A model generated the notes under the pieces. That model saw nothing but the letters and a program-made list of their open reading frames with translations, was not told where the DNA came from and did no database searches. The translations under genes and the position numbers were made by a program. A stretch of 63,628 bases of DNA, filler included, from Octopus bimaculoides (taxonomy: Eukaryota): assembly GCF_001194135.2 (NCBI RefSeq). It is 10 parts of 7 records of this genome, joined end to end, with 100 filler letters (N's around TTAATTAATTAA, not from the genome) between each part and the next. Parts side by side here need not be neighbours in the genome. Positions count along the whole stretch, not along the records: positions 1 to 9,024 come from NC_068981.1; 9 more parts are not named here. One strand, 5' to 3'. Shown here piece by piece: positions 1-20,875 of the stretch; position 1 is the first letter of the stretch, and every line of letters begins with the position of its first letter.

Positions 1-140
1 TGTCTTCAGTTATGGCTTTATTGATCAATAATTGATCTTTACAGCCGTATGAGCCCTTGCAGCATCCCTTCTGCTCTTCTGGAAACAGGTTGTTATTTTC
101 CAGGTGCTTACTCAATCTCTGCGATATTATTGCAGTAAAG
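1..140 (-). mobile_element. R4/Dong-type non-LTR retrotransposon RT fragment
   Basis: Minus translation TAIISQRLSKHLENNNLFPEEQKGCCKGSYGCKDQLLINKAITED matches the EQKG...GCKDQLLI RT motif of R4/Dong elements. Confidence 0.8.
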
Positions 141-170
141 GCTTTATTATTATTATTATTATTATTATCA

Positions 171-201
<31 letters not shown>

Positions 202-808
202 TATTATTATTATTGTGTGTGTGTGTATGTGTGTATTTATGAATGGATCAAAATAGTTTGATTCAAACACTTTGGCACTCTGAGTTCCAAGTCTTCGGCA
301 ATTGAAGTCTGAATGAGAGTTCGATTGAAGAGCGTCAATGCTTACTACTGGACGTTAGCCAGTGGTTGGTCAATTAATGTCACGTGGTGTCGCAGTTTGA
401 TGCTGGTAAAATCAGCGACAGCAATTACTTGGAGAATGCCGCATGTTGAACAGGAAATCGACCGCGTGGTGGATAGGAAATCGGTCGCGTGATGGTAAGT
501 AGGAAGGGGCGGGGTATGTGGAAGTATATATGTATATATGTGCATATGGTTATATCCATATATCTGCGTGTATGCATCCGTACTTATACGAGTCTGTATG
601 TGTGCATAGATGTACATTCACACATCCGCGCGCGAGCGCACACACATACATACACACACACACACAAACGCACACACACACACAAACGCACACACACATA
701 TACATAATTGCAGGCTAATGTCCAGCAGTAAACACTAACTCTCTTCAATCGAATTTTCATTCAGACACCATGTACATAAAAATAATTATACATATATATA
801 TTTCATAC

Positions 809-871
809 CGGGAATTTCCATTTCTTCTATGCGAATGGGTACTACATTATTTGGTGCCTTACTTGGAAATT
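809..871 (-). CDS. Exon C of unknown repeat protein (63 nt, phase 1-1)
   Basis: Minus strand: acceptor tttcatctgttttctttttgcag, donor CCG|gtatga; open frame (E)FPSKAPNNVVPIRIEEMEIP, similar to exon A (P.K.P.NV...EM..P). Confidence 0.65.
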
Positions 872-1694
872 CTGCAAAAAGAAAACAGATGAAACATTTA
901 AAAAATTTAATGTTGACCAATATTTAAATACTTTTACTTATTCTTCCTTCTTGAAAATATTTGCATGAATGGCACTTATCAAAAGCATTAAATATCAATA
1001 TTAAATATTATTTTATACATTTATTCCATTACTAGTTTTAATCAGTGGATATTGGCCAAGTTGAGACACGATTTCAAGGGCTTGATCAATCATATTGTCC
1101 AGAGTACAAATTTCTTTTAAATTCTGGTAGTTTTTTTTTTTTAATTGTTATCTAGTTGTCGAAAAGCAAGTTACAGTACATGAACGTAAAAATGGACAAT
1201 ATGTACAATTTTATCTTTATAAAATTACTCAAAATTCTATTAACCGTTTCGGCTCTGTCTCTCACTTTGATCACTAAATTCATTCAATTTATTATCTAGA
1301 ATTACTACGTTTGGATTACTCCTAGTTCACTCAACAAAGCTATATAGTTTGCTAAACATATTACTTAGATCGTCTAGTCAGATATTTACATTATTTGTTA
1401 TTCAAACAAATCTATAATAACCTCGGTAATTTTCTCAGAATAATGGAAACTTCTCAAACCTGTTTCAGTATGGATGCCAGTAACTCTACGGAAGAGACTG
1501 ATTTTTTCAAATCACATGTACATCAAAGACATCGGAAATACTTAGCTGTAAATTGTTATTACTTTGGTTTTTTACTGGTTTCAGTAACTGATCAGAGACA
1601 AGCTGGTGCACCACCTTGAAGGTTGAATCGACCATATTGATCGCACTAATTCTTTAAAAAAATTTTAAATTATAGAAGCTTTAGAAATTCTTAC

Positions 1695-1772
1695 CTGGAA
1701 TCTCTGCTTCTAGCTTTCGAATGAAAGCTCTATAAGGGTACACAGTTTCTTGTTTTAATTTTACCCCAGTTT
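1695..1772 (-). CDS. Exon B of unknown repeat protein (78 nt, phase 1-1)
   Basis: Minus strand: acceptor ttatttcatgcacgtctttttacag, donor CAG|gtaaga; open frame (E)TGVKLKQETVYPYRAFIRKLEAEIP(E). Confidence 0.65.
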
Positions 1773-3249
1773 CTGTAAAAAGACGTGCATGAAATAAACA
1801 TTTTTGAATATTTTCTACTGTGCAGCATGTTTTATGAAGTTTACGTGAAGATGTTTCCACCTTAACTAAAGACATTGGGCAATAAAATATTTCATTCCAT
1901 TATAGGTCTCAGTAATTAGTCAGTGACCCAGCTCTATGAGGGACTCGTCTCCAAAACGCTATAGGGCAGCGAATCGGCGAGCAAGCAAACTATGTATATT
2001 GACTACGTGTAGTCAATATACATGCGTCTCCTTGAAACGAGCCAATAACCTGCCCTGGTCCAGTTTCTTCCCTAACCCCACCTTACAGCCTGGCTCGTTT
2101 TCCTGCTCCGGCTCACCTGTCACATATGCCCCTACCTCTCTAACACCACCATCCTCACATACACCTATCATCGTCCTTATCACATCACCGACACCTTTGC
2201 TTGCATTTCTGGTAATATTATTTACTGCATTTGTAATGCAATTGGTAGAACTATATACATGTTCAATCTCATGCGGACGTCTCGTGTATAGTTCTGCAAA
2301 TTATATTGCTATAACGATCACACTGATGATTTGCAGACATTTACGTAAGTGGTAACAATGAAACCGGGTTTGTGATTAATCTTTATATTTTGCATCTTTT
2401 CATTTGTCTTGCCCGCTTACGTTCTGGCGTTTGCTGAATTTTCTTGAGAACAATCTTTTCTTAGTGGTCAGACCATAGGTGGTTTTCTTCTAGCATAATA
2501 GATGTCCACTTAGTAGTCATCCCTCTGATATATATATATATATATATAATACTTCATTTAGAGAATTAACATTGCTTGTTTTCACCTTTTCAATATCAGT
2601 GAAGAATGCCACTGGAAAAGAAGATATAAGATTTGCCAGGTTTTTCTCTCTCACCAAGNNNNNNNNNNNNNNNNNNNNNNNNNNNNNNNNNNNNNNNNNN
2701 NNNNNNNNNNNNNNNNNNNNNNNNNNNNNNNNNNNNNNNNNNNNNNNNNNNNNNNNNNNNNNNNNNNNNNNNNNNNNNNNNNNNNNNNNNNNNNNNNNNN
2801 NNNNNNNNNNNNNNNNNNNNNNNNNNNNNNNNNNNNNNNNNNNNNNNNNNNNNNNNNNNNNNNNNNNNNNNNNNNNNNNNNNNNNNNNNNNNNNNNNNNN
2901 NNNNNNNNNNNNNNNNNNNNNNNNNNNNNNNNNNNNNNNNNNNNNNNNNNNNNNNNNNNNNNNNNNNNNNNNNNNNNNNNNNNNNNNNNNNNNNNNNNNN
3001 NNNNNNNNNNNNNNNNNNNNNNNNNNNNNNNNNNNNNNNNNNNNNNNNNNNNNNNNNNNNNNNNNNNNNNNACACACACACACACACACACACACACACA
3101 ACGTTTGTGTGTATGCGCGTTATGTATTCCACTCTACACAATCATACTTTTGTAATAGACAGGTTTGGTGGGGCTGAATTAGACTTTCTGCCTGAATTTT
3201 TCATTTTTCTTTGATAACGTGTGTGTTGTCGAGGCCTTATATTTGCGTT

Positions 3250-4720
3250 ATATATGTTCAAGACAATTGCTTTCATTATTACTATATCTGATAACCAGGT
3301 GATCTAGCAAGCGGGGCCTCATTTCAGTAAGGGGGTTGCGGTGCGCAATGATGCCGTCGACAGGTAGGCTCCGAAACGGCGCGCATTCTCTCCTCATGAC
3401 CCTATACACTTGCGGAGCTTTCGACTGGTAGCACTTGCATGTGCAAGTTATTTGCAGAACAACTAAGACCTTGTGGTAGCTAACCACTGACGTACCGGAA
3501 GTACGGTTAGATATCCTAGAAAGACAAAAGGACTGCTCAGAAAGACAAGCTGACAAGAGGAAAGACTATCGACGCCACGAAAGACTGGCAGTGGCTGCGG
3601 GCTTACAATCCTCGCCTCTGTAACATATTATAACAACTACCAATGAGAATGATAGCCCCATGATTGACCAAGAGGTGGGAGCCGAGAATCAATCAAACTC
3701 AGTTAACATGGAAATAGCCTTGGACATGAATATGGCTATTCCTTCTAACAACGAAGTGCAAGCAACTTTGGATGCAAGCTTGCTGTAGGACCTTTGCAAA
3801 CGAGAGGTACTTAAAGATACATCAAGGAAAGACTTGTAAGAGGAGGACAGAGCAGTGTGGATCAGATGAAATACGTGGCAGATGAAATACGTGGCAAATC
3901 ATCCCCAGACAGGCAAATCATCCACAGCGGATCGATAAATGCTACAGTAAAGTTCTCTTCCCGACAGGAAACTGCAGGCTATGAGACTGGTGCATCAGAT
4001 AGAACTCGGAGGAAACCGTGGGTCTTGTGGCCTGTTACTAATGAGAAAGGGAGATATAAAGAGCTTGAGAACAAGGTATGTCGAGCTCTTTATAGAATGA
4101 CAGGATCTACAGTGGAGAAACTGGGAAAGTTATCAAGCTCAATATACGATACAAGAAAAGAATTATTTGTAGTGAAAGATGGTATCCGATTAGCGAAAGG
4201 AAAGTGTGGACCAAGCAGGAGGATCAGGAAAAATGAAACAGTTGAGGAAGAAAAAGACCAGCCTAAGAAAGCAAGGGAAATGTGCTGAGCAAGACGAAAA
4301 ACCTGGCCTCGCGCAACTGTACGAAGATTTAAAAAAGATATGTCGTTATGTGCAACGGCATATTCGCCAGTATGAGAGAAGGAAAGCAAAAGGATTCATG
4401 AACAGTTTCTGAAGAACTCGTATGGGGAAGCTGTTCAGTGAACCGAAGAGTGGTACTTTATCGTGCACAAAAGAAGAACTGATTGCTCATATCAAGGAAA
4501 CCTACAGCGATCTCAACCGTAACCAGCCACTGCCACCTATAAATAGGCTAAAGCATGTCTTAGAACCTGATATCGAATTTCAAGTTGGGGACATCATGGA
4601 GAAAGAGGTGAATGATTTTGTGAGAAAGGCTAAAGCTAAGAGTGCCCTTGGTGTCTCGTATAAAGTATATAAATATTGCAATCGTCTATGAAAGAAGCTG
4701 TGCAAGTTGTTTGCAAAACA
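3250..4720 (+). mobile_element. HERO-like (RLE-type) non-LTR retrotransposon, degenerate 5' part
   Basis: Zinc-finger-like CCRTFANERYLKIHQGKTC (~3780-3840), then RKPWVLWP...KLGKLSSSIYD, then KLFSEPKSGTLSCTKEELIAHIKETYSD...VRKAKAKSALGVSYKVYKYC, typical of the HERO pre-RT region; frameshifts and stops present. Confidence 0.7.
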
Positions 4721-4790
4721 TCTTTTCTATTACTTTAGTTAATTTCTGTAGACTATAGAAATTAGAGAAATGATGTTTGGAAATCCTTAC

Positions 4791-4868
4791 CTGGAGTGTC
4801 CATTTCTTTTTTGTGAGCGAGTATTATATTACGCAATACATTGGTTGGTCTTTCTTTCGGTTCAACTA
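4791..4868 (-). CDS. Exon A of unknown repeat protein (78 nt, phase 1-1)
   Basis: Minus strand: acceptor tttaatttctcctaccttgtag, donor CAG|gtaagg; open frame (V)VEPKERPTNVLRNIILAHKKEMDTP(E). Confidence 0.65.
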
Positions 4869-5667
4869 CTACAAGGTAGGAGAAATTAAATGTTAAAAAA
4901 GTAGGAAGTTTTTTGTGTATTGGTGTAATTTTCCAGACTGAAAAGATACTTCACTTTCCCCAGAATTTTTAAAAAAAAGTTACAGAGGTTTAAAGTTTGA
5001 TCATTTTTACCCAGTCAGAAAACAGAATTTGGAAGCTGTCATTTTGTGCGTGATAGCGCGTGTCGTCTACTGGAAACAAATGAAATATTGCGAAACTCTG
5101 CTTTACGCACATCATATAGCCCGTCGTAACTCTACTTTTTTGTAATTTTCAGAAAACTTTGCGAATTTGTATTCTACAAGCAGGAATTCATACATTTATT
5201 TAAAAACCAAAAAAAAAAGTTTTCGTGCGTGATCTAAGGCCTATTTAGCTATTATTTTTATCACATATTATACCGCATGTGTTTTATGCATTTAAAAAGC
5301 GACAAAACAAACACGTCGTAAGCAGTTTGGTAACAGCTTGGTTTGTTAATATGGAAACAGACACCTATATATATATGTCTGTACCTTTCGACTGTCTAAA
5401 ATTACTCAAATTTGTAAACTTTAAAAGCTATTAACACTTTATTTATTGATTTATGGCAAAAATGAATTTCATGTCAAAGTTTACTTCACTAATACGCCAA
5501 ATATGAAATCAATTGGAAGAAAAATTTAAGAAAATGAAAAATGGCAGCTAGACAGAAAAGATACAAAGAATATTCTACTGTTCAGTATGAGTTTAATGAG
5601 GTCTTTTGAGAAATTTTTTACATCAAATTTTCCTGCAAATTGCTTTCATATTTTTTTCAATCAAACG

Positions 5668-5880
5668 GCGTGCTGGTAGAATCGTTAGCACGCGGGCAAA
5701 ATACTTAGCGGCATCTACTCTGACTTTATGTCCTGAGCTTAAATTCCGCCGAGGTCGATTTTTCTCTTCATCCCTTCGGGTTCGATGAAATAGGTATCAT
5801 TTGAGCACTAAGGTCGAAGTAATTGACTTACCCCAGCCCCTAAACTACTGGCCATGAGCCAAAATTTGAAACCAATATTA
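5668..5880 (+). mobile_element. tRNA-derived SINE family B (Meta/MESC-like central domain, recalled)
   Basis: ctggtagaatcgttagcacg...aaattccgccgaggtcga...catcccttcggg.tcgat...ccaaaatttgaaacc, repeated ~10 times in the window. Confidence 0.8.
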
Positions 5881-6174
5881 TTCTTTGATTTTACAGGCAG
5901 GCGTGTAGGTGCAGCATTACAAAGAGCTTAAGTGGTCATATCGGTCATATCGAGGTCAGCATTCATGTTTTGAAACCGACACTTACTTTATCAGTCGCTG
6001 AGCATCAAATCGGTGGTTCGAATCGCAAATTTCTGTGACATAAGCATAAATTTGGACACAGGTGCTCGTGCATGCATTTAAAACGCAAATATGAAAAGGG
6101 CATATACACACAATCACACACTTACAGTTGTACATACACGCTTATATATATATATATTCCTTTATTCTTTTACA

Positions 6175-6537
6175 CGTTTAAGTCATTTGACTACAGCCAG
6201 TTCAAGAAATCGATTCTTCATTCTTTGCAAGCCTAGTACTTATTATATCTGTCTCTTTTGTCGAACCACTAAGTTACGGGTACATAAACACACTAACATC
6301 GGTTGTCAAGCGATGGTAGGGGGATAAACACCGACACAGAGACACACACATAAAATATATGTACATATATATATATACAACAGGTTTCTTTCAGTTTCCG
6401 TCTACCAAATTCACTCACAAGACTTTGGTCGGCCTGCGGCTATAGTAGAAGACACTTGCCCAAGATGCCATGCAGTAGGACTGAACCCGGAACCATGTGG
6501 TTAGGAAGCAAGCTTCTTACCACATAGTCACGCTTGC
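6175..6537 (-). mobile_element. tRNA-derived SINE family A (octopus OR-type)
   Basis: Reverse complement of 19667-19983 (…ggttccgggttcagtcc…cttgggcaagtgtcttctactatag…ggtagacggaaactgaaaga…), with internal microsatellite. Confidence 0.85.
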
Positions 6538-6555
6538 GCCTTATACGTATGTGCA

Positions 6556-7425
6556 AGAAAAAATAGCAAAAATGCACATTGAATATCGAAAAACTAAAGG
6601 CTTTTTTATGAAAAGTAGCGATAAATATATACAATTCGATGAACTGAGTGAAAAAATGCGGTCGGCCTAACTATGGCACATGCCCCCACCTTTTGGAGGG
6701 TACAGAGTTCCACTTTAAACAAGGTAAAATATTTAAGATTAAATCAAATTTCACCTGTTCCTCGGAAAACCTAATCTATGCCATTACCTGCTTAAGGTGC
6801 GGTAATCAATATATCGGTCAAACAGGGATATCACTACATCGAAGAACCACTCTTCACAAAGAACAGATCCGTCACCCACAGTATAGAGATACAGGTCAGT
6901 GAACACATAGATAGGTGTGCTAGGAACTTTAATCCTAATTTCCTAATTTTCCCCTTCTATCAATGTTCACAGAACACCTCAGTACAGCAAAGAATGGATA
7001 AAGAAGCAACTTTCATCAATAAATATCATCCACAACTTAACATGAATACAACATAATACAGAACACTACTAACCTTACCAACAATACCACTAACACCCAT
7101 ACATTCCGTACACCATTCATATTACAGTATTATATCAACCCTAATTGCACCACGTCCAGAACTACTTACATTCGTTACACAATCTTTTTACTCAGGGACT
7201 AGTAGACCCACACTTTTTGATAATCGGTACGCATTCAAAGCCAGTGAACAGCAATGACGATACCGGTTTGACTTTAAATCTCTTTAACAATTCAAAGTAA
7301 TGAATTTAATTCCTCTTAATTCTACCTCAGTTCATCTAATTGTATTTATTTATCGCTACTTTTCATAAAAAAAGCCTTTATCTTTTTGATATTCAATGTG
7401 CATTTTCGCTTTTTTTCTTCTTACT
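6556..7425 (+). mobile_element. Penelope-like element 3' fragment (GIY-YIG endonuclease plus tail) bounded by inverted terminal segments
   Basis: ORF 6648-6902 contains IYAITCLRCGNQYIGQTGISLHRR (GIY-YIG); the frameshifted continuation is VSEHIDRCARN...KEATFINKYHPQLN. 6556-6648 is the reverse complement of 7326-7418. Confidence 0.85.
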
Positions 7426-7489
7426 TTCCCCATATATATATAATACACACACACATAGACATGTATGTATATGTACATATTTATATCTA

Positions 7490-8160
7490 TTATACAAAAG
7501 TCAGGGTCTTTACGTGTGTTCCTGTGTTACTTATACATTCGAAAACTACTGCACCGATCCTAATGAAATTTGGAACACAAAATCCAAGCCTAGGGAGAAG
7601 GGTAATGCTGTGTGTTTCATACAATTTCATGGACTAAAATTACTGAATGGATCCTCATGATATTTAGAACTTAGATTCAATGCATAAAGGCGGGTATAAT
7701 GCAATATGTTTGGTTTGAATTTGTGGGGGGCTTAAAGGGGGCAGAACACCCCATGAAAATTCATAAATTTCCGATGTTGATGAAATTTCAACCATAGATA
7801 ATTGACACACATCAAGAAGTATTCCCAAAGTTTCCGCTTCTCATGAGGATTCTAAGACCCCTAATGGGGGCCTTGATTTCCTAATTTTAGTCATTTTTTA
7901 TGATCCAAAACTAGGTCCAAAGTACTGAATGGGTCTTTATGAAATTTGGAAATTATATTCTATGCATAAGGACAGATGTAATGCAGTATATGTTTGAAAG
8001 TGAAGGGGCATAAATGGGGCCATAACCCCAATGAAAATTCATCTATTTTTGTTGTTGATGAAATTTTAACCATAGATATGAGACACAAATGAAGTAATAT
8101 TCCTAAAATTTCAACTTCTTAGGAGTTAGTAATCCCTACATTTTAGTCATTTTTCCTAAG
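7490..8160 (+). mobile_element. Probable non-autonomous Helitron/Helentron-like element with internal ~260-280 bp tandem duplication
   Basis: Starts atctattatacaaaagtc...actactgcaccgatcctaatgaaatttgg (DINE/HINE-like motif, recalled); ~7634-7900 is repeated in diverged form at ~7917-8155. Confidence 0.4.
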
Positions 8161-8371
8161 TCAGGACGAATACAATTGTAGTCTTGGAAGCTGTAGAACC
8201 ACCAAGATGAGCGTTATTTATAATCCAATGGTACAACACTGTAAGAGTTTTCTTTTAGATATACTTAGATTGTGATTTCTGCAATGTGGTGCATAAATTG
8301 TCAAGTATAAGAGAGACATCTTTGCTTCCATTGCTAAGGAAAAACTCTAGTTAGACTGTATCCAAAACATT

Positions 8372-8485
<114 letters not shown>

Positions 8486-8594
8486 AGTAATGTTTTGGAT
8501 ACATTCTAAATTGAGTTTTTTCATTAGCATAGGTAATGCCCATTGACAGACATACATGCATAGATATATACACGCATACATATATGCATACATA

Positions 8595-8757
8595 TACGAC
8601 GGGCTTCTTTCAGTTTCCGTCCACCAAATCCGCTCGCAAGGCTTTGGTCGGCCCAGGTCTATACTAAGAGATACTTGCCCAAGGTGCCACGCTGTGGTAC
8701 TGAACCCAAATCTATGTGGTTGGGAAGCAAACTCCTTACCATACAGCCATGCCTGCG
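8595..8757 (-). mobile_element. SINE family A, 5' half
   Basis: acgacgggcttctttcagtttccgtc...cttgcccaaggtgccacgc shared with the other copies. Confidence 0.8.
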
Positions 8758-9124
8758 TCTATGGTCACATTTTTACGATTATTGCTGCCATCATTGACTT
8801 ATTATTATTATTTTATGTTTGACTTTTGTTTTGCATTTGTACAAGTTGGATCCAAGTCTCACCCAGAGACCTCAAGAGACAACAAGTTAGAAGTTCATGT
8901 AGGTGTTATGCCTAGGGTACCATATATTTGGATTTGTACAGTTTTGTTCAAGTGAATGTTTAAGAAACCATAAGAAAATTATGTGTTTGCTTTAAAATCT
9001 GAGATCACATAGACAGTATTTTACNNNNNNNNNNNNNNNNNNNNNNNNNNNNNNNNNNNNNNNNNNNNTTAATTAATTAANNNNNNNNNNNNNNNNNNNN
9101 NNNNNNNNNNNNNNNNNNNNNNNN

Positions 9125-10641: not shown

Positions 10642-12502
10642 TATATATTTGGAAAAATTACAAGTAATTCTTGACACGGCACTGATGTTTCAAGTTATAT
10701 TATTGTATTACAATGCAATATTTCTGTGTTTTATGCAAACTGGAGTTCATGTACTAAAAAACAAATTAAATATATAGTGAATATTCTTTTCTCTTTTCAG
10801 TAACACCATAATGGTTTCACACTAAAGTGTATCCTCAAATATCCTCAAGTATCTAGAAATACAGAAATACCGAGAATTCGCTGCAATTATATTCTTTAAA
10901 ATATAATGTAGTGAGAGAGAAATTCTCTTTAAATAAACTCTTATAGATTTTTCATAAGAGTGGCATAAAGTATATGTAAACGAAATAGTACATTTTTTCC
11001 GCTCATGCATCGTCCACATTGTTTTATCAAATTTAGCATATTAATGTTTAGTAGACACTTAAACATATGTACACACGTATAAATAATCCATTACTGTGAA
11101 GCACATCATCTCTGGCAAAACAGGTAATTACAAACAATATCTAAAAATTCTAAACGTATATACTAAAAGATAAGCAATTATGTGAAATTAGAACGAGATG
11201 CGTTGATTGTTATATAATGAACAAACACATAACATACTCCCCATCATTTAACCAGTTATATAACAGCGAAAATACAATTTGATTGCGGTGTTTCCAGGCC
11301 GTGACAATGGTGGACAGCCGTGGATTCAGGTAGCAGCGATTCCCTGGGTCCTAAATAGCCAGTGGGGTTATGAAAGAATAATAAGCCTAGAAGCAGTATA
11401 ATAACGCTGTAGTTAGTGTACATGAATGAAGACATATAGAGAATGTTATCATAATCGTCCAAAATGTGCCGATCGACCATGCGACATCAAGACCACGTGA
11501 GGCAGACACTAAGAAATTTATCGGCTAGTGAGTTTAAAACACCTCACCTCAATGAATCTATTCGATGTGTGTCATAAATAGTCCCGTATAGAAAAAAGTC
11601 CCGTGTGACGGGTTGCGGTTTAAACATCCAACTTAGAGGCATTACTTTTAAATATATAGGGCAGGGAATCGTTAATTAGTAATAAAATTAATAATTAGCA
11701 ATTTTGCCGAGTAGCTCAGTATGAAAAAACCTTTATCGGTAAAATCATTTATAATCATAAATATACAGGGATTAGCAGGAGCCTGCTTCTCCAACATACT
11801 GAGAATTCAGAAATAGCAGTCAAAGAACTACTGATTCCAAACTACAAATTTTTTCTCTAACGGATGGTCAAAATTCACACGAGTTATTAGACACTTGCAA
11901 ATTTATTCGAATATTGAGGCTGAAGATCGGAATAGGGAACTTCATACCCTTAACCTGAAACGTCGTACCCAATTAACTAAAGGCAGGTTTNNNNNNNNNN
12001 NNNNNNNNNNNNNNNNNNNNNNNNNNNNNNNNNNNNNNNNNNNNNNNNNNNNNNNNNNNNNNNNNNNNNNNNNNNNNNNNNNNNNNNNNNNNNNNNNNNN
12101 NNNNNNNNNNNNNNNNNNNNNNNNNNNNNNNNNNNNNNNNNNNNNNNNNNNNNNNNNNNNNNNNNNNNNNNNNNNNNNNNNNNNNNNNNNNNNNNNNNNN
12201 NNNNNNNNNNNNNNNNNNNNNNNNNNNNNNNNNNNNNNNNNNNNNNNNNNNNNNNNNNNNNNNNNNNNNNNNNNNNNNNNNNNNNNNNNNNNNNNNNNNN
12301 NNNNNNNNNNNNNNNNNNNNNNNNNNNNNNNNNNNNNNNNNNNNNNNNNNNNNNNNNNNNNNNNNNNNNNNNNNNNNNNNNNNNNNNNNNNNNNNNNNNN
12401 NNNNNNNNNNNNNNNNNNNNNNNNNNNNNNNNNNNNNNNNNNNNNNNNNNNNNNNNNNNNNNNNNNNNNNNNNNNNNNNNNNNNNNNNNNNNNNNNNNNN
12501 NN

Positions 12503-12541
<39 letters not shown>

Positions 12542-13403
12542 GTATATGTATATATATGTATTTATATGGATAGCCATATCTGAAATGCTACTGATTAGAC
12601 GTCTGCTGGCCTAGGGCTGATCCAGATCTTAGCGGGAACAACATCGAAACAAAAGCTAAAATATGAAAAAGCAAATGGAAACACAAGCATTACGGCAGCC
12701 ATATTTAAAAACATCTTTTAACTTAAGAAATAAATTGATTATGTCATTATATATAATTGGCTGAAACATAGTGTATGCGTCATATTTGGTTGGAGGATAT
12801 TTACTGCTAAGTTGACCTACGATATTTTATGTGATATTTTAGATGATTTTTAAAATCTCATTATCTCACCATGCTAAATTTCAATTAATTTAGGTAAATT
12901 TTTTCTGCGTACGTCATTTAGTACAACTCCACCTACCTGAAACCTATGTTTCACGCATCAAGATGTACATATACATCCATGATCTTGTTCAAACACAAAG
13001 ACGATTACATGCATCGGAATATCCCCCCACCACAATGCGCACACTTAGACACACTCAGGCGTACACACACACACACACACAGATATAGACATAAATATAT
13101 ATATGCATATACATACATATAAAATATCTATCTATCTATCTATCTATATATGTATATATATATATTTATCTATGTGCATATACATACATACAAAAACACA
13201 CACACACATACATATACATGTATATACATCCATACAGCAAAAAAATCCATCTAGATAAACGTTTATAAAAGAAGTTGCATTTCTTTCATAATCATAGATG
13301 TACGTGTATGTGTTTGTATGTGTAAGTATATACATGTGTGTGTCTGAGCGTGTGCGTGTATATCTGCACACATATATATGTACATATGTATATAAATATA
13401 TAT

Positions 13404-13435
<32 letters not shown>

Positions 13436-13604
13436 NNNNNNNNNNNNNNNNNNNNNNNNNNNNNNNNNNNNNNNNNNNNTTAATTAATTAANNNNNNNNN
13501 NNNNNNNNNNNNNNNNNNNNNNNNNNNNNNNNNNNTTGTTTTTCCATTCGTCACCATTTCTCCTTTTATGAGTTCGCACGGTCGTTCCTTACATATATAT
13601 ATAT

Positions 13605-13795
13605 AGGTTAAAAAAAAACACAAAAAAAACAACAAAGTGAGGACGTGATACGGATAGTGTTATTGGACGCTCGGGAAAGGAAGGGGAGAGAGTATGACGT
13701 TTCGGGCGGAGCCCTTCGTCGGAAAGACAGAAAGTTCAGAGAATGGAAAAACGGAGGAAGAGGAAAATGGCACCGATGCCCACGAGGTTACATTA
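13605..13795 (-). mobile_element. Penelope-type terminal repeat fragment with hammerhead-shaped motif
   Basis: Begins at a (TA)n run like the other copies; minus strand CTTT CCGACGA A GGGC TCC GCCC GAAAC GTC at 13692-13726. Confidence 0.55.
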
Positions 13796-14211
13796 TATAT
13801 ATATATAGAGAGAGAGTTTGGCTGCTCTTTCTGGCGAGTTAGATGTCCTATTATAGGCATCTCTGTATATATAGAATAGTGGTACAACAATGCACCAATA
13901 TTTATTGGAAATAGCAGTCGATAATATACAGTGGTATAGAAAAGCTTCAGTAACGTTAATTTGATTAGTTTCCCTCAGCTAGATTCACCAAGACAAAATT
14001 TCAAATGTTGCTACATCAGTGCCAGTATACTCGCCTGAACGCCTAGTTGTTAACAGAACTGAGAACAGTAAAAATGTTTTCAAAGAAAAAATTATTAAGT
14101 AGTGCAATACAATAGTATATTTTTTCTTTTTGTGTGTATATATATATATATATATATACCTATATCAAACAAGGTTGTGTGATTTAGAAGTTCGCTTCAC
14201 AAACGCGCTTG

Positions 14212-14410
14212 TTGGCAGAATCGTTAGCACGCCGTGCGAAAAGCTTAGCGGTATTTCGTCTGCCACAACAATCTGAGTTCAAATTCCATCGAGGTCGATT
14301 GTGTCTTAAATCCATTGAGGATCGATAAATTAAGTACCAGTGGAGTACTGGGGTTGATGTGATCGACTGTACCCCACCAAAAAAAATCCAAGCCTAGTGC
14401 TTATAGCAGA
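14212..14410 (+). mobile_element. SINE family B
   Basis: ggcagaatcgttagcacgccg...gagttcaaattcc...gtcgataaattaagtaccag. Confidence 0.8.
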
Positions 14411-16086
14411 AAGGATTGTTACGCTCACGTGAGGTGAGCTGATGAACTCTTCCCACCAAATGGTTTATAGAATGTTCTGGAACTTTTTGCTAGCATTATA
14501 TAAAAAGACAAGTAACTCTAAGAAGAGAGCTATCACATTCTTCCGAAGTTGTATAATTTTTACTATATGTTAGCTTCTCAATTATTCTACATTAAAATAT
14601 TAATAAAAACTGAAGATACCACACAGAGTTGTTCTTATTTTCTGAACTAAATTTGTCCTCGCTAATTTTGAATCATTTTCGTGTTATATATCACGATGTT
14701 GCAATGGCCAAACGTTCACTTGTTTGTTAATTCTCAAATGTTATTTATTCAACTGCTTTAAAAATGTATAATGTTCCTAGTTAAATAAACAGAATGAAAA
14801 ATTATACCCAATTTCGTGCGATTCCGTGGATTGAACACGCAGCATATAAATGTTATTTATGGTCAATTATTTATTAACATTATCACAAGTATACTTCATA
14901 TCATGCTGACTAAGCAATCTGGCAAAAAAAAAAACGGTGGCCTAAACATTAGGGGGCGATTTGTAAGACTAAACTCTTCAAGACGGAACACCAACATGAG
15001 CGGAGTCCAAAGGCTGAAACAAGTAAAACAATGAAATAGTGCAAACGTTTAAATGAATAAAATATAAAACTTTACACTGGAATTTTATATTGAGTACTAC
15101 ATGTAAAAGTAATCCAGTGCGATTGAACCGTTTTCAAATAAATACGTGTGTGCGCGAGCGTACATATATGTGGGGCAGAGAAAGTGGGTATATATGCACA
15201 TACACGCACACACACACACACATACATACATACATACATACATACATACATACATAATGAATGAGTAAGGAATAAGTAAGCGCATGGCAACGAGCGGGAA
15301 TGTGTGTGTATATATATATATGAAGGAGGTAGGGAGAGAGAGAGAGAGAGGGAGGGAGAGAGAGAGGGAGAGAGAGAGGAAGAGAGAGACGGAGAGAGAG
15401 AGGGAGAAGACTGCATATGAGCATATTGCGTGTAGGTAATGTGGTGCGTGGAAGTAGATTTATACGCAAATGTATCAATATATAAAGAATGTGCGTTGAT
15501 TGGTATAAATATAATTTAACACATATGTGTTAATTAACGAGTGTGTGTATGTGTGAGTTGTCTGTATTTTATGTAGACTTGTGGGGATTTAGTCAATAAG
15601 CATGTTCATATTAAATGTATGTCGTATGGAATGCAAAAAATGTACGTATGTCTATATATGTATGTATGTATGCATGTATGCATTTATGTATGTATGTATG
15701 TGTGTATGTATGTATGCATATGCATGCGTGCGTGTGGGTGTAAATATAATATGGTTTTATGTTTCAAATTTCTCACCGAAGGAGAACGAATTGGTTTCTA
15801 ACCAAGAAACAAGTCTTTCATTGGAAATTAAACAGTGTGTGTGTGTGTGTGCGTGCGCGCGCGGTTGGTTTCTGATCGTTCCAGCCTCTGATTGGCGCTG
15901 AAAAGTGGTTCAGTGTTGTACAACGTTTTATCCATTCGAAACAAATTCATACAGGAACTTCTTGGAGTCTCAGAACGTTTGCACAGATTTACTGAGTTTA
16001 GGAAGTGGTCTTACATGGTCACGAATTGACTTCTACCGTGTATACATGCACATATGTGTGGACGTATGTGTACGCATGCGTGAAGG

Positions 16087-16158
16087 TGCGTGGCTTAGTG
16101 GTTAGGGCATTCGGCTCACGATCGTAAAGTCGTGAGTTCGATTCCGGGCGACGCGTTG
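16087..16158 (+). mobile_element. tRNA-derived SINE family C head
   Basis: gcgtggcttagtggttagggc (A box)...gagttcgattcc (B box); nearly identical to 52626-52700. Confidence 0.8.
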
Positions 16159-16904
16159 NNNNNNNNNNNNNNNNNNNNNNNNNNNNNNNNNNNNNNNNNN
16201 NNTTAATTAATTAANNNNNNNNNNNNNNNNNNNNNNNNNNNNNNNNNNNNNNNNNNNNTAAGGTTAAAGAGAAGATTCCAGACAAAAAGTAATGAGCAGT
16301 GGAGCAAGTGAAGAAGACAGCATGCATATCAGAATGATACGAAGACAGGGGGAAACCTGGTGCCGATATGCGTCCCGAATTTTAAAAAACTTCTATGCAT
16401 TGATGTTGCAATTTCATGCAGTGTGTGAATGCACATTTATCCCCGAATAGACTTCTTTAAATGCAGACATGTTTTTTTTAAAAAAGACGTGATTAATATT
16501 CTGTCACCCATTAACAATGCTGTTTTTCACATCAACTTAAAAAAATAAAGAAAAATATAAAGCTTCAATAGTGCCAGTTTTTAGTTAGAACAATTGTAAC
16601 AAGTTCTATTGTGAGATGAAATTGTACAATCTACAACCGACTTTTATGAAATTGTTTCTTAATTAATATGAGACATCTGTCCTGTTTTCCTTCTTTAATT
16701 TCTTTTCATCTCATTTTTACCATTTTGCTCTAGTTTTATATATTTCATTCGAAACTTTCCTCAGTCTCCAGATTGTAGAAAATTTTAAGAGAAATATATA
16801 CGTATACAAAATGTCGTCTTAAAGTGTTGCTGGTTTATAAACTAAATAACGTACTAGACCACAAGCTTCTAATGATTTGAGATCGTGATGCAAATATTCT
16901 ATCC

Positions 16905-17100
16905 ATTGATATTGGCAGAAATTTGAGGGAAGAGGCGAGTCGATTACATCAACCTCTGTACTCAAATGGTACTTATTTTATCGACCCGAAAGGATGAAAG
17001 GCAGAATCGACCTCGGAGGAATTTGAGCGCAGAACGTAAAGACAGACGAAATGCCGCTAAGCATTTTGCTCGGCGTGTTAACGGTTCTGCCAACTCGCCA
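16905..17100 (-). mobile_element. SINE family B
   Basis: Reverse complement: tcgacccgaaaggatgaaaggcagaatcgacctcgg...gaaatgccgctaagcatttt. Confidence 0.8.
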
Positions 17101-17224
17101 CTGTGATTTTGCAACTTCATACAGTGTGTTAATGTATTTCGATTTCTAAGGAGCCTTTTTTTCTCTCAAATACTGGCATTAAAAAAAAATGTTTAATATT
17201 GTTGTCCATTAACAGTTGTGAATA

Positions 17225-17565
17225 CTGCTGAGACCCCCTTTAATCATGACTGACCATGGGATTGCACCTAGAAAGTTACCCTCCCAGGCACAAGTCCGGG
17301 CAAGGTTATTTATGGAAGACCAGCAGTCGCCCATGCATAGCGGCCTCCCCTATCCACGCCACCAGTGTTATCCAAGGGAAAGGCAAAGGCCGATACAGCT
17401 TGGTACCTGTGACGTCGCAACTCATTTCTACAGCTGAGTGAACTGGAGTAACGTGAAATAAAGTGTCTTGCTCAAGAACACAACACGCAGCCCGGTCCGG
17501 GATTCGAACTCACAGTCTCACGATCGTAAGATCGACGCTCTAACCACTGAGCCATGCACCTTCAC
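17225..17565 (-). mobile_element. SINE family C, near full length
   Basis: Reverse-complement tRNA-like head (gcatggctcagtggttag...gttcgaatccc) followed by ttgtgttcttgagcaagacact and body; related fragments at ~18320-18575 and ~28000. Confidence 0.8.
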
Positions 17566-17904
17566 AGTTGTGAATAAACGTAACACGAAACATTAGTTAT
17601 AACATGTTGCACCTGTTATACAATTTTATTCAACTGGCTCTTGTTGGCGCAGAACATCAGAAATTTCATAGAATTCTAATGAGCAAAAGCATTGGGTGAT
17701 AAGATGTGTATCTATCAAAACTTATAAAATACAATTGGTCTTGTGTCAAAGTTGAAAAAAAAAAAAATCATTTTGATGAATAATTTTGGTGGAGAGAAAC
17801 TATTGAAAAGTAAACGAAAACTTAAGAAACACAATCTATCTCTTTAATAAAATAAAGCAATGTGGCACTGAGAGACCTCATTGTCTTTTACAGTGTATTT
17901 TCTA

Positions 17905-18090
17905 CCAGTTTGAAATATTCTATCATTGATATAATGAATATGAACATTATTTGCATTGTTTACATTTGACGGATATTTGTCCTCATCTTGTTTGTTGTTA
18001 ACAGCACGTTTCGGCAGATATACTCTCCAGCCTTCATCAGGTGTCTTAGGGAAATTTCGAACCTGGGTTCTCATTCCTAAGGTATTTTTC
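17905..18090 (-). mobile_element. Penelope-type terminal repeat fragment with degenerate minimal hammerhead ribozyme
   Basis: Minus strand ACAC CTGATGA AGGCTG gagagtatat CTGCC GAAAC GTG CTGT (18001-18045): canonical CUGAUGA/GAAA core, mutated cleavage site. Confidence 0.65.
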
Positions 18091-19429
18091 AATGAGTGAG
18101 AGAGCAGTGCATGCCATCAAAGTGACACTGGGGTAAAATATACAAAACCCAACATACCTATCATGACTACCCGTCTGATAAGGGTACACCAGGCACATGC
18201 ATCACAACCATGTGTGCTNNNNNNNNNNNNNNNNNNNNNNNNNNNNNNNNNNNNNNNNNNNNTTAATTAATTAANNNNNNNNNNNNNNNNNNNNNNNNNN
18301 NNNNNNNNNNNNNNNNNNGAAAGGATCCCAATGTAGAAGCGGGACCAAACGTCCCCAGTAAATGACGGAAACTACTGCAGCAACGTTTGCAATTGACAAT
18401 TGATATGTTCCTTAACTCCTTAGGGGCACTGCAGCCATGCAGCGTATTTCGGGTGAGGAAGCCTGGCAAAGCCCGTCCCTCTCCAGGCTAAATTCATTTC
18501 AACAGCCGAGTGGACTTGAGCAACGTGAAACGAAGTGTTTGCTCAAGAACACAACCCATCGTGAGTCCACCCCCCCCCCAACCACCAAGCTATGCGCCTC
18601 CACCAATGTCTGCGAGCGGATTAGCAAATCCTGGATAAGTCTGAATCCCCCACATGCGACGGCCAGGCAAAATATCGAACTGAGAACATTGTGCTGCTGT
18701 TAATACTAACCTTATTAGAGAACAATGCATTTATATTCTACAAATACATATATAGTTTATCTGCCAACAGAATGTTGCTACTGTTTAGCCCCAGGAAAGA
18801 CATCTTTTCCAGCTGGCTACCGACACACAGCTTGAGTCCGTATAGTATGATCAAGGGAGTTTATTGCTCCCATCTCTAGTCTTCGTGATACTGACAGACC
18901 TAGGTTTCTGGATTGTTTCCCGTCTTCGGTGTGAAATAATCACAGGCCAGTGATGAGGGCTTCTTCGTCTTACTCATACTATATATTTTTTTAAAGTGGC
19001 ACACAGTTGTTGATCTCGTAAAGAGGAAAAACAACTGGTTTTAAATCTCTGAGCCAGAGATATGCAATAACAGTAGTGAACAGCAAAGTTTGTTTGCCAA
19101 CTGTAAAGTTTATTTGCAAATGCTATATACGGACAGAGACTGTGTGTCATTAGCCAGCTGGAAAAGATCTTTTCCTGGAGCTAAAACAACAGTAACATCG
19201 TCCTAAACAGGACTGCCACGTTATATAGCGAGAGAAGAATAGAGGGAGACAGATATACAGAGAGATACATACATACATACATACATACATACATACATAC
19301 ATACATACATACATACATACATACATACAGACAGACAGATAGATAAATTTAGAGAGGTAGATAAACAGAGAGGGAGAAAGACAGACAGAGACAGAGATAT
19401 TAACTGTTTGTTTTTCTTTTCTTTTACAG

Positions 19430-19565
19430 ATTTGCAACAAGATTTTATATACAGGCAGTTCAGACCACACATCACGCTCTTGGGTATCGGAATTTGCCGA
19501 ATGTACCCGAGTTTATCGCGGGCATAGACACACTGTGATCTGCATGAGGTTTCATGAAGGGTTAC
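19430..19565 (+). CDS. WDR86: WD40-repeat protein, WDR86-like: internal exon (136 nt, phase 0 to 1)
   Basis: Acceptor ttttcttttcttttacag, donor TTAC|gtgagt. Translates ICNKILYTGSSDHTSRSWVSEFAECTRVYRGHRHTVICMRFHEGL, a WD40 repeat resembling recalled human WDR86 LVNRLVYSGSADRTVKCWLADTGECVRTFTAHRRNVSALKYHAGT. Confidence 0.9.
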
Positions 19566-19598
19566 GTGAGTAAATTATAATTTCTTTATCATCTTTCT

Positions 19599-19646
<48 letters not shown>

Positions 19647-19666
19647 GTGGACATTTTATTTCTTTT

Positions 19667-19983
19667 AGTGGCTGTGTGGTAAGTAGCTTGCTTACCAACC
19701 ACATGGTTCCGGGTTCAGTCCCACTGCGTGGCATCTTGGGCAAGTGTCTTCTACTATAGCCTCGGGCCGACCAAAGCCTTGTGAGTGGATTTGGTAGACG
19801 GAAACTGAAAGAAGCCCGTCGTATATATGTATATATATATATATATATATGCGTGTGTGTATGTATGTGTTTGTGTGTCTGTGTTTGTCCCCCTAGCATT
19901 ACTTGACAACCGATGCTGGTGTGTTTATGTCCCCGTCACTTAGCGGTTCGGCAAAAGAGACCGATAGAATAAGTACTAGGCTT
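19667..19983 (+). mobile_element. SINE family A, near-consensus copy running into a gap
   Basis: A-box-like gtggctgtgtggtaag, B-box-like ggttcagtccc, body, internal (TA/TG)n and 3' domain. Confidence 0.9.
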
Positions 19984-20571
19984 NNNNNNNNNNNNNNNNN
20001 NNNNNNNNNNNNNNNNNNNNNNNNNNNNNNNNNNNNNNNNNNNNNNNNNNNNNNNNNNNNNNNNNNNNNNNNNNNNNNNNNNNNNNNNNNNNNNNNNNNN
20101 NNNNNNNNNNNNNNNNNNNNNNNNNNNNNNNNNNNNNNNNNNNNNNNNNNNNNNNNNNNNNNNNNNNNNNNNNNNNNNNNNNNNNNNNNNNNNNNNNNNN
20201 NNNNNNNNNNNNNNNNNNNNNNNNNNNNNNNNNNNNNNNNNNNNNNNNNNNNNNNNNNNNNNNNNNNNNNNNNNNNNNNNNNNNNNNNNNNNNNNNNNNN
20301 NNNNNNNNNNNNNNNNNNNNNNNNNNNNNNNNNNNNNNNNNNNNNNNNNNNNNNNNNNNNNNNNNNNNNNNNNNNNNNNNNNNNNNNNNNNNNNNNNNNN
20401 NNNNNNNNNNNNNNNNNNNNNNNNNNNNNNNNNNNNNNNNNNNNNNNNNNNNNNNNNNNNNNNNNNNNNNNNNNNNNNNNNNNNNNNNNNNNNNNNNNNN
20501 NNNNNNNNNNNNNNNNNNNNNNNNNNNNNNNNNNNNNNNNNNNNNNNNNNNNNNNNNNNNNNNNNNNNNAA

Positions 20572-20840: not shown

Positions 20841-20850
<10 letters not shown>
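20572..20850 (+). mobile_element. Penelope-type terminal repeat with hammerhead-shaped motif
   Basis: CTTT CTGTGGA A GAGC GTAG GCTC GAAAC GTT AAAG at 20712-20747; ends ...ccct(ata)n; homologous to 61127-61330 and 31455-31590. Confidence 0.65.

Positions 20851-20875
<25 letters not shown>

What the first reader, a model, noticed from the sequence alone, without database searches (positions are those of the whole stretch)
809..4868. Hidden antisense gene built from short symmetric phase-1 exons, one peptide repeat per exon
Seen: three minus-strand segments missed as exons by the ORF track (4791-4868, 78 nt; 1695-1772, 78 nt; 809-871, 63 nt). Each has a pyrimidine-rich AG acceptor, a GTAAG/GTATG donor and an open frame in phase 1-1, and each ends in a Pro codon plus G. 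Spliced: VVEPKERPTNVLRNIILAHKKEMDTP-E-TGVKLKQETVYPYRAFIRKLEAEIP-E-FPSKAPNNVVPIRIEEMEIP. All units end E-[MA]-[DE]-[TI]-P-E, and A and C share P.K.P.NV. Established: symmetric same-phase exon arrays (e.g. titin PEVK) allow modular exon duplication and skipping. Inference: part of a lineage-specific repeat protein whose length may be tuned by exon skipping. I do not recognise the family.
Basis: partly seen in the sequence, partly recalled or inferred. Interest (0 to 1): 0.75.

Follow-up and report, generated by a model that had tools for sequence, protein, structure and literature searches.

The report
Spliced exons of an octopus-only gene
The three short minus-strand segments are real, spliced, in-frame exons of a small repeat-containing gene found only in Octopus, made at very high levels in one RNA sample, but there is no sign that exon skipping tunes its length and its function is unknown.

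Summary
Observation confirmed. Exons at 4791-4868, 1695-1772 and 809-871 (minus strand) have the stated acceptors, donors, phase 1-1 frames and peptides. Spliced contigs of one RNA run (X10) join them exactly at 1772->4791 and 871->1695. Summed word depth is about 10^5-10^6 on exons and 7-60 in introns.

The assembly gap (2659-3071) lies inside the A-B intron and is bridged by that junction, so it does not touch the reading frame.

The exons are the third to fifth exons of an orphan gene. The only relative among 1.84 billion protein representatives is the Octopus vulgaris hypothetical protein CAI9715272.1. That locus is collinear with the window and holds intact orthologues of all three exons; exon A is not in its model.

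In O. vulgaris all introns are phase 1. Six internal exons (78, 78, 78, 63, 75, 36 nt) are symmetric. Exon pairs 2/A and C/D are segmental duplicates that include intron flank.

X10 shows full-length exon D spliced to exon E. In O. vulgaris that frame gives a 232-aa protein: an acidic repeat half and a strongly basic tail. The deposited 113-aa model is therefore probably mis-spliced.

No exon skipping was seen. The gene is not titin/PEVK, and "antisense" has no content. Exons diverge about as fast as introns (15 nonsynonymous, 1 synonymous change). Function and tissue remain unknown.

The parts
4791..4868 (-). Exon A (third exon of the gene), 78 nt, phase 1-1. It encodes VVEPKERPTNVLRNIILAHKKEMDTP plus G, and has a tandem TAG|TAG acceptor.
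   Evidence: Sequence and frame. X10 joint 1772->4791 with depth 4236 in 12 contigs, and depth about 6.4e5 at position 4806. The upstream loose end is the exon 2 end ...FTQKQELDIP. The O. vulgaris orthologue at L001 18746-18823 is intact. It is paralogous to exon 2 (75.8% over 91 nt, including 40 nt of intron).
1695..1772 (-). Exon B (fourth exon), 78 nt, phase 1-1. It encodes ETGVKLKQETVYPYRAFIRKLEAEIP plus G.
   Evidence: Sequence and frame. Joints 1772->4791 and 871->1695. The orthologue at L001 24945-25022 is part of P0001. Contigs of organisms B, D and E keep the frame.
809..871 (-). Exon C (fifth exon), 63 nt, phase 1-1. It encodes EFPSKAPNNVVPIRIEEMEIP plus G.
   Evidence: Sequence and frame. 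Joint 871->1695 with depth 2722 in 9 contigs. The downstream loose end is the start of exon D (AATTTGATCAGAGTTTAAG...). Orthologue at L001 25830-25892.
1773..4790 (-). Intron between exons A and B. It contains the assembly gap (2659-3071), a high-copy repeat at about 2484-2658, an (AC)n run at 3072-3100 and a dispersed-repeat insertion at about 3106-4699.
   Evidence: X10 depth is 11-20 on the unique parts against 1e5 or more on exons. Microsatellites. Repeat copy number from DNA run X6, and X6 joints 3101->4699 and 3412->4699. Positions 3106-4656 are orthologous to L001 21298-22826 at 82%.
872..1694 (-). Intron between exons B and C (823 nt).
   Evidence: X10 depth is about 7, with contigs tiling the intron (pre-mRNA). 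Window 761-2230, which spans this intron and exons B and C, aligns to O. vulgaris at 87.8% identity with 16 gap openings over 1493 aligned columns, and none of those gaps falls in the exons.
4869..9024 (-). Part of the intron between exon 2 (outside the window) and exon A. No further exon of this gene lies here.
   Evidence: The exon 2 end recovered from RNA is absent from the window. X10 depth is 28-60 with no exon-like peak except a dispersed repeat at 6273-6623. The region is collinear with L001 11375-18915.
1..808 (-). Part of the intron between exon C and exon D (exon D is outside the window).
   Evidence: The exon D start recovered from RNA is absent from the window. Window 144-766 aligns to L001 26109-26722, while O. 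vulgaris exon D sits at 29130-29204.
773..1196 (-). Duplication unit: exon C plus its flanking intron, paralogous to the exon D region.
   Evidence: 76.8% identity over 453 aligned columns to L001 28798-29233 (E 4e-96). Within O. vulgaris, the C segment matches the D segment at 75% over 225 nt (E 3e-41). A diverged second X6 contig lies on 818-1137.

Best explanation
The three segments are consecutive internal coding exons (third, fourth and fifth) of a small protein-coding gene restricted to the genus Octopus. It is the orthologue of the O. vulgaris hypothetical protein CAI9715272.1.

Shown:
- The exons are spliced A-B-C exactly as predicted.
- Upstream, exon A joins an exon ending ...FTQKQELDIP (exon 2).
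- Downstream, exon C joins a 75-nt exon D, and exon D joins a 36-nt exon E.
- In O. vulgaris every intron is phase 1 and all six internal exons are symmetric.
- The array grew by tandem segmental duplication of an exon together with flanking intron (2 with A, C with D). Each exon starts after a codon's first base and ends 'CCN G', so every copy is automatically in frame.
- The mRNA is extremely abundant in one sample and essentially absent from the other RNA runs examined.

Inferred:
- The mRNA is translated into a protein of about 230 aa with no signal peptide or hydrophobic segment.
- Its N-terminal half is an acidic array of 21-26-residue units (net charge -10). In units A and B each unit is a variable stretch followed by a short amphipathic helix and an acidic, Pro-terminated linker.
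- Its C-terminal 86 residues are strongly basic (net +17, pI 11.6).

Most likely mode of action (speculative): an abundant, largely disordered intracellular polyampholyte of one specialised cell type. The basic tail would bind a polyanion (nucleic acid, or acidic protein or membrane), and the acidic repeat array would act as a spacer or charge-masking domain. Repeat sequences evolve almost freely while repeat number, frame and splice signals are kept.
For: Splicing and expression:
- X10 joints 871->1695 and 1772->4791 have GT..AG ends, with exon depth 1e5-1e6 against intron depth 7-60.
- Intron depth falls from 5' to 3' (28-60, then 11-15, then 7), as expected of pre-mRNA of a minus-strand unit.
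- Among indexed runs, exon B words occur only in X10 (RNA), X6 (DNA of the same species) and X16 (another species; kind not on record).
- Raw RNA runs X25-27 and contig run X28 show almost nothing.

Orthology:
- The exhaustive HMMER search gives a single hit, P0001, at E 1.9e-16.
- The O. vulgaris locus L001 is collinear with the window and has intact orthologues of A, B and C of identical length.
- Related species keep frame and splice sites.

Coding:
- One frame is open through 134 codons of exons 1-D (chance 7e-5).
- An in-frame stop lies just upstream of the ATG.
- X10 shows full-length exon D joined to exon E. In that frame the O. vulgaris last exon stays open for a further 86 codons, giving 232 aa.
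- There are no indels in 219 exonic nt, against 16 gap openings in the 1493 aligned columns of the block that holds exons B and C, all of them in intron.

Architecture:
- Exon paralogy.
- Unit alignment.
- AlphaFold on the single sequence gives helices at residues 10-24 and 41-50 (pLDDT about 80 in those blocks) and coil elsewhere, pTM 0.23.
- Charge segregation and lack of any hydrophobic segment.
Against: - There is no direct evidence of translation.
- Exons diverge from O. vulgaris about as fast as introns (7.3% against about 8.1%), and 15 of 16 changes are nonsynonymous. No purifying selection on the amino-acid sequence is demonstrable, and the excess of nonsynonymous change is not significant on its own (Fisher p = 0.20; binomial 0.03-0.11 depending on which events are counted).
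- The conserved purine-rich exon ends (GAAGAAATGGAAA...) could be kept as splicing enhancers rather than as peptide.
- The start codon, exon E frame and basic tail are read from O. vulgaris DNA. For O. bimaculoides only 20-30 nt of each neighbouring exon were recovered from RNA.
- Tissue is unknown because run metadata are coded.
- Contig word depth summed over thousands of error-variant contigs is a crude measure of expression.
- No homologue, Pfam family or solved structure supports any functional assignment.
Confidence: 0.72

Rival explanations
1. A very abundant spliced long non-coding RNA. Its exons happen to share an open frame because they descend from one duplicated exon, and the peptide is never made.
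For: - Exon divergence is about equal to intron divergence, and dN/dS is not below 1.
- There is no homologue, domain or structure.
- The conserved exon ends are purine-rich and abut the donor, as splicing enhancers would be.
- Because the exons are duplicates, their open frames are not independent events.
Against: - The frame stays open through exon 1 (with an ATG and an upstream in-frame stop), six symmetric exons from at least three distinct sequence groups, and a further 86 codons of a unique last exon, 232 codons in all.
- Exon lengths are identical between species while introns accumulate indels.
- If anything, substitutions avoid synonymous sites (1 of 16-22), which is the opposite of codon-blind drift.
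Confidence: 0.13
2. A precursor of secreted or processed peptides from a gland. Each exon-encoded unit, or the cationic tail, would be released from an anionic pro-region, as in antimicrobial-peptide or toxin precursors.
For: - Extreme, sample-restricted abundance.
- Fast, mostly nonsynonymous evolution.
- An anionic repeat region followed by a cationic amphipathic tail.
Against: - The O. vulgaris N-terminus, MEQRMEMEKSKNEQ..., is hydrophilic. The highest 19-residue hydropathy in the whole protein is 0.24, so there is no signal peptide or membrane segment.
- An in-frame stop precedes the ATG.
- No regular dibasic sites flank the units.
Confidence: 0.08
3. One reading: a PEVK-like elastic segment of a large repeat protein whose length is tuned by differential exon skipping.
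For: - Symmetric phase 1-1 exons of 63-78 nt, one unit each, rich in E, P, K and V.
- The deposited O. vulgaris model omits exon A even though the exon is intact there.
Against: - The gene starts two exons upstream and ends three exons downstream, about 232 aa in all, with no Ig, FN3 or other domain.
- P+E+V+K content is 39-47%.
- No skipping joints or alternative partners appear in the expressing run.
- The O. vulgaris model is a prediction that also appears mis-spliced at exon D.
Confidence: 0.04

Closest known systems
Octopus vulgaris hypothetical protein CAI9715272.1 / UniProt A0AA36AHV6 (113 aa; chromosome OX597814.1)
   Same: It is the orthologous gene. Its locus is collinear with the window, and exons B and C are part of the model (62% identity to the 73-aa peptide, E 1.9e-16). 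Exon A is present and intact in its intron.
   Different: The deposited model omits exon A. It also leaves exon D at an internal GT, which shifts the frame to an early stop. O. bimaculoides RNA instead uses the full 75-nt exon D joined to exon E, and that frame gives 232 aa in O. vulgaris. The protein has no name, function or literature.
Titin PEVK exon array (from general knowledge of titin)
   Same: Short symmetric same-phase exons, each encoding one unit of about 26-28 residues rich in Pro, Glu and Lys. This architecture permits in-frame duplication and skipping.
   Different: This is not part of a giant Ig/FN3 protein. P+E+V+K content is only 39-47%. No skipping was observed. Units A and B carry predicted amphipathic helices. 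The protein ends in a basic tail.
Elastin and other genes built wholly of phase 1-1 cassette exons (from general knowledge)
   Same: All introns split codons after the first base, so exons are interchangeable cassettes and arrays expand by exon duplication.
   Different: There is no sequence or compositional relation. The octopus protein has no signal peptide and is not an extracellular matrix protein by any test available here.
Taxonomically restricted (orphan) genes of cephalopods
   Same: No homologue outside a narrow clade, expression restricted to one sample, fast sequence evolution, and a low-complexity or disordered product.
   Different: Expression is unusually high (exon depth 1e5-1e6 in one run). 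The way the gene grew, by segmental exon duplication in a fixed phase, is clearly documented here.

Membership tests
Titin PEVK region | Lies within a giant titin/connectin-type gene flanked by Ig/FN3 domain exons | tested here: not met
   In O. vulgaris the ORF starts at an ATG two exons upstream and ends three exons downstream, 232 aa in total. Pfam finds no domain.
Titin PEVK region | About 70% or more of residues are P, E, V or K (threshold from general knowledge) | tested here: not met
   0.47 for the 73-aa window peptide and 0.39 for O. vulgaris exons 1-D.
Titin PEVK region | One unit of about 26-28 residues per short symmetric exon | tested here: met
   Exons of 78, 78, 78, 63 and 75 nt, all phase 1-1, one unit each.
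Titin PEVK region | Differential exon skipping gives length isoforms | tested here: not met
   Only A->B and B->C joints are seen, each exon border has a single partner, and no 871->4791 joint appears. The test is limited to assembled contigs of one run, which drop rare variants.
Taxonomically restricted (orphan) protein-coding gene | No detectable homologue outside a narrow clade | tested here: met
   HMMER against 1.84e9 representatives gives one hit, from O. vulgaris. Word-index searches found nothing else. Pfam and PDB gave nothing. Same-study RNA runs of organisms F and G show no match at 80% likeness.
Taxonomically restricted (orphan) protein-coding gene | Transcribed and spliced from a conserved locus | tested here: met
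   X10 junctions. Orthologous exons and splice sites are present in O. vulgaris and in contigs of organisms B-E.
Taxonomically restricted (orphan) protein-coding gene | Translated into a protein | not testable with these tools
   The only support is indirect: a 232-codon ORF across eight exons, conserved exon lengths, and no stops in any species examined.
Long non-coding RNA | No ORF longer or better conserved than chance allows | tested here: not met
   The open frame has chance probability 7e-5 for the first 134 codons and continues for 98 more. The frame is kept in every species examined.
Secreted peptide or toxin precursor | N-terminal signal peptide | tested here: not met
   Mean hydropathy of the first 25 residues is -1.76, and the maximum over any 19-residue window is 0.24. 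This N-terminus is read from O. vulgaris and was not verified for O. bimaculoides.

The most novel reading that the evidence does not exclude
A gene born or radically remodelled within the Octopus lineage has become one of the most abundant mRNAs of a specialised tissue or stage. It grows by in-frame segmental exon duplication. Its repeat units evolve under positive selection (nonsynonymous changes far exceeding synonymous ones). Its acidic repeat array regulates a strongly basic polyanion-binding tail. That would make it a lineage-specific major cellular component of an octopus novelty.
Probability: 0.2. Interest if true: 0.6.

Novelty: new member of a known kind. Interest (0 to 1): 0.4.

Why it matters
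The work turns three ORF-track blind spots into a verified gene. No O. bimaculoides protein model containing these exons was found in the protein collections searched.

It also suggests that the O. vulgaris model needs correcting: exon A is missing, exon D is cut short, and the frame shifts to an early stop. Using the exon D to exon E junction seen in O. bimaculoides RNA, the frame gives about 232 aa rather than 113.

The gene is a clean, small example of how a symmetric-phase exon array expands by duplicating an exon together with its intron flank. It is also an orphan gene with extraordinary, sample-restricted expression and almost unconstrained (possibly positively selected) repeat sequence.

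If the expressing tissue turns out to be an octopus-specific structure, this would be a candidate major component of it. As it stands, this is an ordinary kind of object (a lineage-restricted repeat gene) and not a new mechanism.

Tried and rejected
I used 720-5100, 4869-8371 and shorter stretches instead.
- The neighbouring exon ends recovered from RNA were searched for in the window and are absent. Exon 2 and exon D therefore lie outside the piece. Window 8817-9024 is not collinear with the exon-2-proximal sequence of O. vulgaris.
- The word-index protein search with the 73-aa peptide found nothing, although P0001 shares several 5-mers with it. That index is therefore incomplete, and I relied on the exhaustive HMMER search.
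- Searches with P0001 and with the basic tail found no further relatives.
Exon A usage and the exon D donor in O. vulgaris RNA could therefore not be tested.
Only the 73-aa window peptide was folded.
- Weak tblastn hits in L001 at 39677-39742 and 44568-44663 lie in long unspliced stretches without splice sites, and I dismissed them as chance.
- Literature searches for the accessions and for a matching O. bimaculoides study did not reveal the tissue of X10.
- A 'repeat or assembly artefact' reading was rejected. DNA run X6 covers the exons with exact contigs at unique-copy depth of about 7, the same as the flanks.
Full report
**1. The observation**

- Exon A, 4791-4868, 78 nt: VVEPKERPTNVLRNIILAHKKEMDTP.
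- Exon B, 1695-1772, 78 nt: ETGVKLKQETVYPYRAFIRKLEAEIP.
- Exon C, 809-871, 63 nt: EFPSKAPNNVVPIRIEEMEIP.

Each follows a pyrimidine-rich tract and an AG. Each is followed by GTAAG or GTATG. Each is open only in phase 1-1 and ends with a Pro codon plus G.

Across the three exons only this frame is open; the other two have 7-8 stops each. The chance of 73 open codons at this composition is 0.0056.

A generic exon scan finds only these three on the minus strand and none on the plus strand. Shuffled sequence gives 0.52 generic hits on average and none with the shared terminal motif.

**2. The gap**

The N run at 2659-3071 lies in the intron between A and B. It is flanked by a high-copy repeat on one side and an (AC)n run on the other. 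The RNA junction 1772->4791 jumps over it. Both flanks therefore belong to one transcript in one orientation, and the frame is independent of the gap.

The gap's true length is open. Between the same two aligned blocks the window has 875 nt (413 of them N), while O. vulgaris has 1650 nt. No family-type exon is found in that O. vulgaris interval, and the RNA joins A directly to B.

**3. RNA evidence**

One run (X10; organism A; Logan contigs; metadata coded) holds spliced contigs with joints 871->1695 and 1772->4791. Both have CT..AC ends on the plus strand, which is GT..AG on the minus strand.

Summed word depth is 2-6 x 10^5 on the exons at 95% likeness. At 80% likeness it reaches 1.7 x 10^6 on exon C, where exon D contigs also align. 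Intron depth is 7-60. Contig depth summed over thousands of error-variant contigs is crude, but the transcript is clearly among the most abundant in that sample.

Intron depth falls from 5' to 3' along the minus strand: 28-60, then 11-15, then 7. This is what pre-mRNA would give and not what DNA contamination would give.

Among indexed runs, only three hold exon B words: X10 (RNA), X6 (DNA of the same species) and X16 (another species; kind not on record). Three deep raw RNA runs (X25-27) and contig run X28 show almost no signal. No further exon of the gene lies in 4869-8371.

**4. Neighbouring exons**

- Upstream of A, the loose end reads ...GTTCACTCAAAAACAAGAATTAGACATTCC (FTQKQELDIP).
- Downstream of C, it reads AATTTGATCAGAGTTTAAG... 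(EFDQSLR...).
- Neither sequence is in the window.
- At 80% likeness, exon-D-derived contigs align to the 3' 56 nt of exon C. Their upstream loose end is 'C end | D start', so exon D is 19 + 56 = 75 nt.
- Their downstream loose end is ?GGTTGACGAAGCGTTATGTA, the next exon, called E here.

**5. Identity**

An exhaustive HMMER search of 1.84 billion protein representatives with the 73-aa peptide gives one hit. It is P0001 (E 1.9e-16), the Octopus vulgaris 'hypothetical predicted protein' CAI9715272.1 / A0AA36AHV6, 113 aa.

Its locus (L001) is collinear with the window over 11375-26722. It contains the following exons:

| Exon | L001 position | Length | Note |
|---|---|---|---|
| 1 | ATG at 10001 | 31 nt coding | an in-frame TAG lies just upstream; phase-1 donor |
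| 2 | 11205-11282 | 78 nt | ENEQMIKENNAFRESRFTQKQELDIP |
| A | 18746-18823 | 78 nt | intact; not in the deposited model |
| B | 24945-25022 | 78 nt | in the model |
| C | 25830-25892 | 63 nt | in the model |
| D | 29130-29204 | 75 nt | EFGQSLSSNEPIHVIPIRIEEMENT |
| E | 31782-31817 | 36 nt | |
| last | from 40865 | | |

All introns are phase 1, and exons 2, A, B, C, D and E are all symmetric.

The deposited model leaves exon D at an internal GT and stops after 113 aa. O. bimaculoides RNA uses the full exon D. In that frame the O. vulgaris last exon stays open for 86 more codons, giving 232 aa ending ...RRSPIRRKMRRLKPIMLDFCRRESKGKWAVF. The deposited model is therefore probably mis-spliced.

No O. 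bimaculoides protein containing the three exons was found in the protein collection.

**6. How the array arose**

- In O. vulgaris, the 3' half of exon 2 plus 40 nt of intron matches exon A at 75.8% over 91 nt (E 1e-13).
- Exon C plus its flanks matches exon D at 75% over 225 nt (E 3e-41).
- Window 773-1196 shows the same C/D paralogy.
- Within the window, A and C share 75% over their last 41 nt plus 3 nt of intron. A and B share only the donor region.
- The eight unit sequences align on a C-terminal motif h-x-[RK]-x-E-[MAL]-[DE]-[IT]-P.

The repeat is therefore real and arose by segmental duplication of an exon with its intron flank. The fixed phase makes every copy in-frame.

**7. Evolution**

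Against O. vulgaris, exons A, B and C have identical lengths and 16 substitutions in 219 nt (7.3%). The block that holds exons B and C (window 761-2230) shows about 8.1% mismatches and 16 gap openings in 1493 aligned columns, none of them in the exons. Fifteen of the exonic substitutions are nonsynonymous and one is synonymous (pN 0.087, pS 0.021).

Contigs of organisms B and C show three further changes in exon A. All three are nonsynonymous, and the listed differences include none in roughly 80 nt of immediately flanking intron. Three more differences, in the 28 nt of exon D recovered from RNA, are all nonsynonymous by my reading.

The deficit of synonymous changes is suggestive but not secure: Fisher p = 0.20, and binomial 0.03-0.11 depending on which events are counted.

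Purifying selection on the peptide sequence is therefore not demonstrable. What is conserved is frame, exon length, splice sites and the purine-rich exon ends, and those ends could equally be splicing enhancers.

**8. The product**

There is no Pfam family, no PDB relative and no other homologue for either the repeat half or the tail.

The N-terminus is hydrophilic, and no 19-residue window exceeds a hydropathy of 0.24, so there is no signal peptide or membrane segment. Residues 1-146 have net charge -10 (pI 5.1). Residues 147-232 have net charge +17 (pI 11.6).

AlphaFold on the single 73-aa sequence gives two helices, NVLRNIILAHKKEMD and RAFIRKLEAE. The ten-residue blocks holding them average pLDDT about 80. 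The rest is coil and pTM is 0.23, so there is no globular fold.

My best reading is an abundant intracellular polyampholyte. An acidic repeat array would space or mask a basic polyanion-binding tail. This step is inference.

**9.

- Supported: real exons, their order, their phase, one unit per exon, lineage restriction, and conservation of frame and splice sites.
- Not supported, exon skipping: with X10 alone, all fifteen listed joints are A->B, B->C (including error variants) or microsatellite artefacts. No 871->4791 joint appears, and each exon border has a single partner at 0.98-1.0 agreement. Contigs drop rare variants, so low-level skipping cannot be excluded. The omission of exon A from the O. 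vulgaris model could not be tested.
- Not supported, titin/PEVK: membership fails on gene context and composition.
- Not supported, 'antisense': the plus strand holds only transposon remnants.

**10. Verdict**

This is a verified, previously unmodelled (O. bimaculoides) or mis-modelled (O. vulgaris) Octopus-restricted gene with a neat symmetric-exon repeat array and extraordinary, sample-restricted expression. It is a new member of a known kind (a lineage-restricted repeat gene). Interest is moderate, and its function is open.

Noticed in passing
L001 29130-29204, 31782-31817 and 40865-41124 (O. vulgaris): The deposited O. vulgaris model CAI9715272.1 (113 aa) omits the intact exon A and leaves exon D at an internal GT. 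With the full exon D, as used in O. bimaculoides RNA, the frame runs on to a 232-aa protein with a strongly basic tail.
   Followed up: yes
window 6648-6902 (+): An ORF fragment has a GIY-YIG nuclease domain (PF01541, 23.2 bits against a cut-off of 22.6). It is probably a remnant of a Penelope-like retroelement inside the intron between exon 2 and exon A.
   Followed up: partly
window about 3106-4699: A dispersed repeat carries plus-strand ORF fragments (3857-4288, 4422-4691) with no Pfam match. DNA run X6 covers it at 300-900x against about 7x for unique sequence, and X6 shows joints 3101->4699 and 3412->4699. The insertion is shared with O. vulgaris (82% identity), so it predates the split of the two species.
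   Followed up: partly
window 6273-6623: A short dispersed (SINE-like) repeat shows a sharp RNA depth peak in every RNA run (63,000 in X10; 50-75 in the raw runs) with many variant letters. The signal comes from other copies of the repeat and is not an exon of this gene.
   Followed up: partly
window 4865-4871 (-): Exon A has a tandem TAG|TAG (NAGNAG-type) acceptor. Use of the downstream AG would drop one Val codon. X10 contigs show the upstream one (exon start at 4868) as dominant.
   Followed up: partly
window 8817-9024 compared with L001 11205-11374: In O. vulgaris, exon 2 ends 53 nt upstream of an (ATA)n run. In the window, the sequence beyond the matching ATA run (about 8800-8815) is unrelated and exon 2 is absent. 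This points to an insertion, a rearrangement or an assembly difference in O. bimaculoides.
   Followed up: partly
window 2484-2658 and 3072-3100: The gap is bordered by a very high-copy repeat (X6 depth up to 2.8e5) and by (AC)14. Low-depth contigs joining 2549 to about 3081 probably come from other repeat copies, so they do not resolve what the gap contains.
   Followed up: no
window 868-8371 (introns), run X10: Intron word depth falls stepwise along the direction of transcription (28-60, then 11-15, then 7). This is consistent with nascent pre-mRNA of a very heavily transcribed gene.
   Followed up: no
L001 18916-21297: About 2.4 kb just downstream of exon A in O. vulgaris has no counterpart in the window, where positions 4657-4698 are only 42 nt. 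It is an indel between the two species inside the A-B intron.
   Followed up: no
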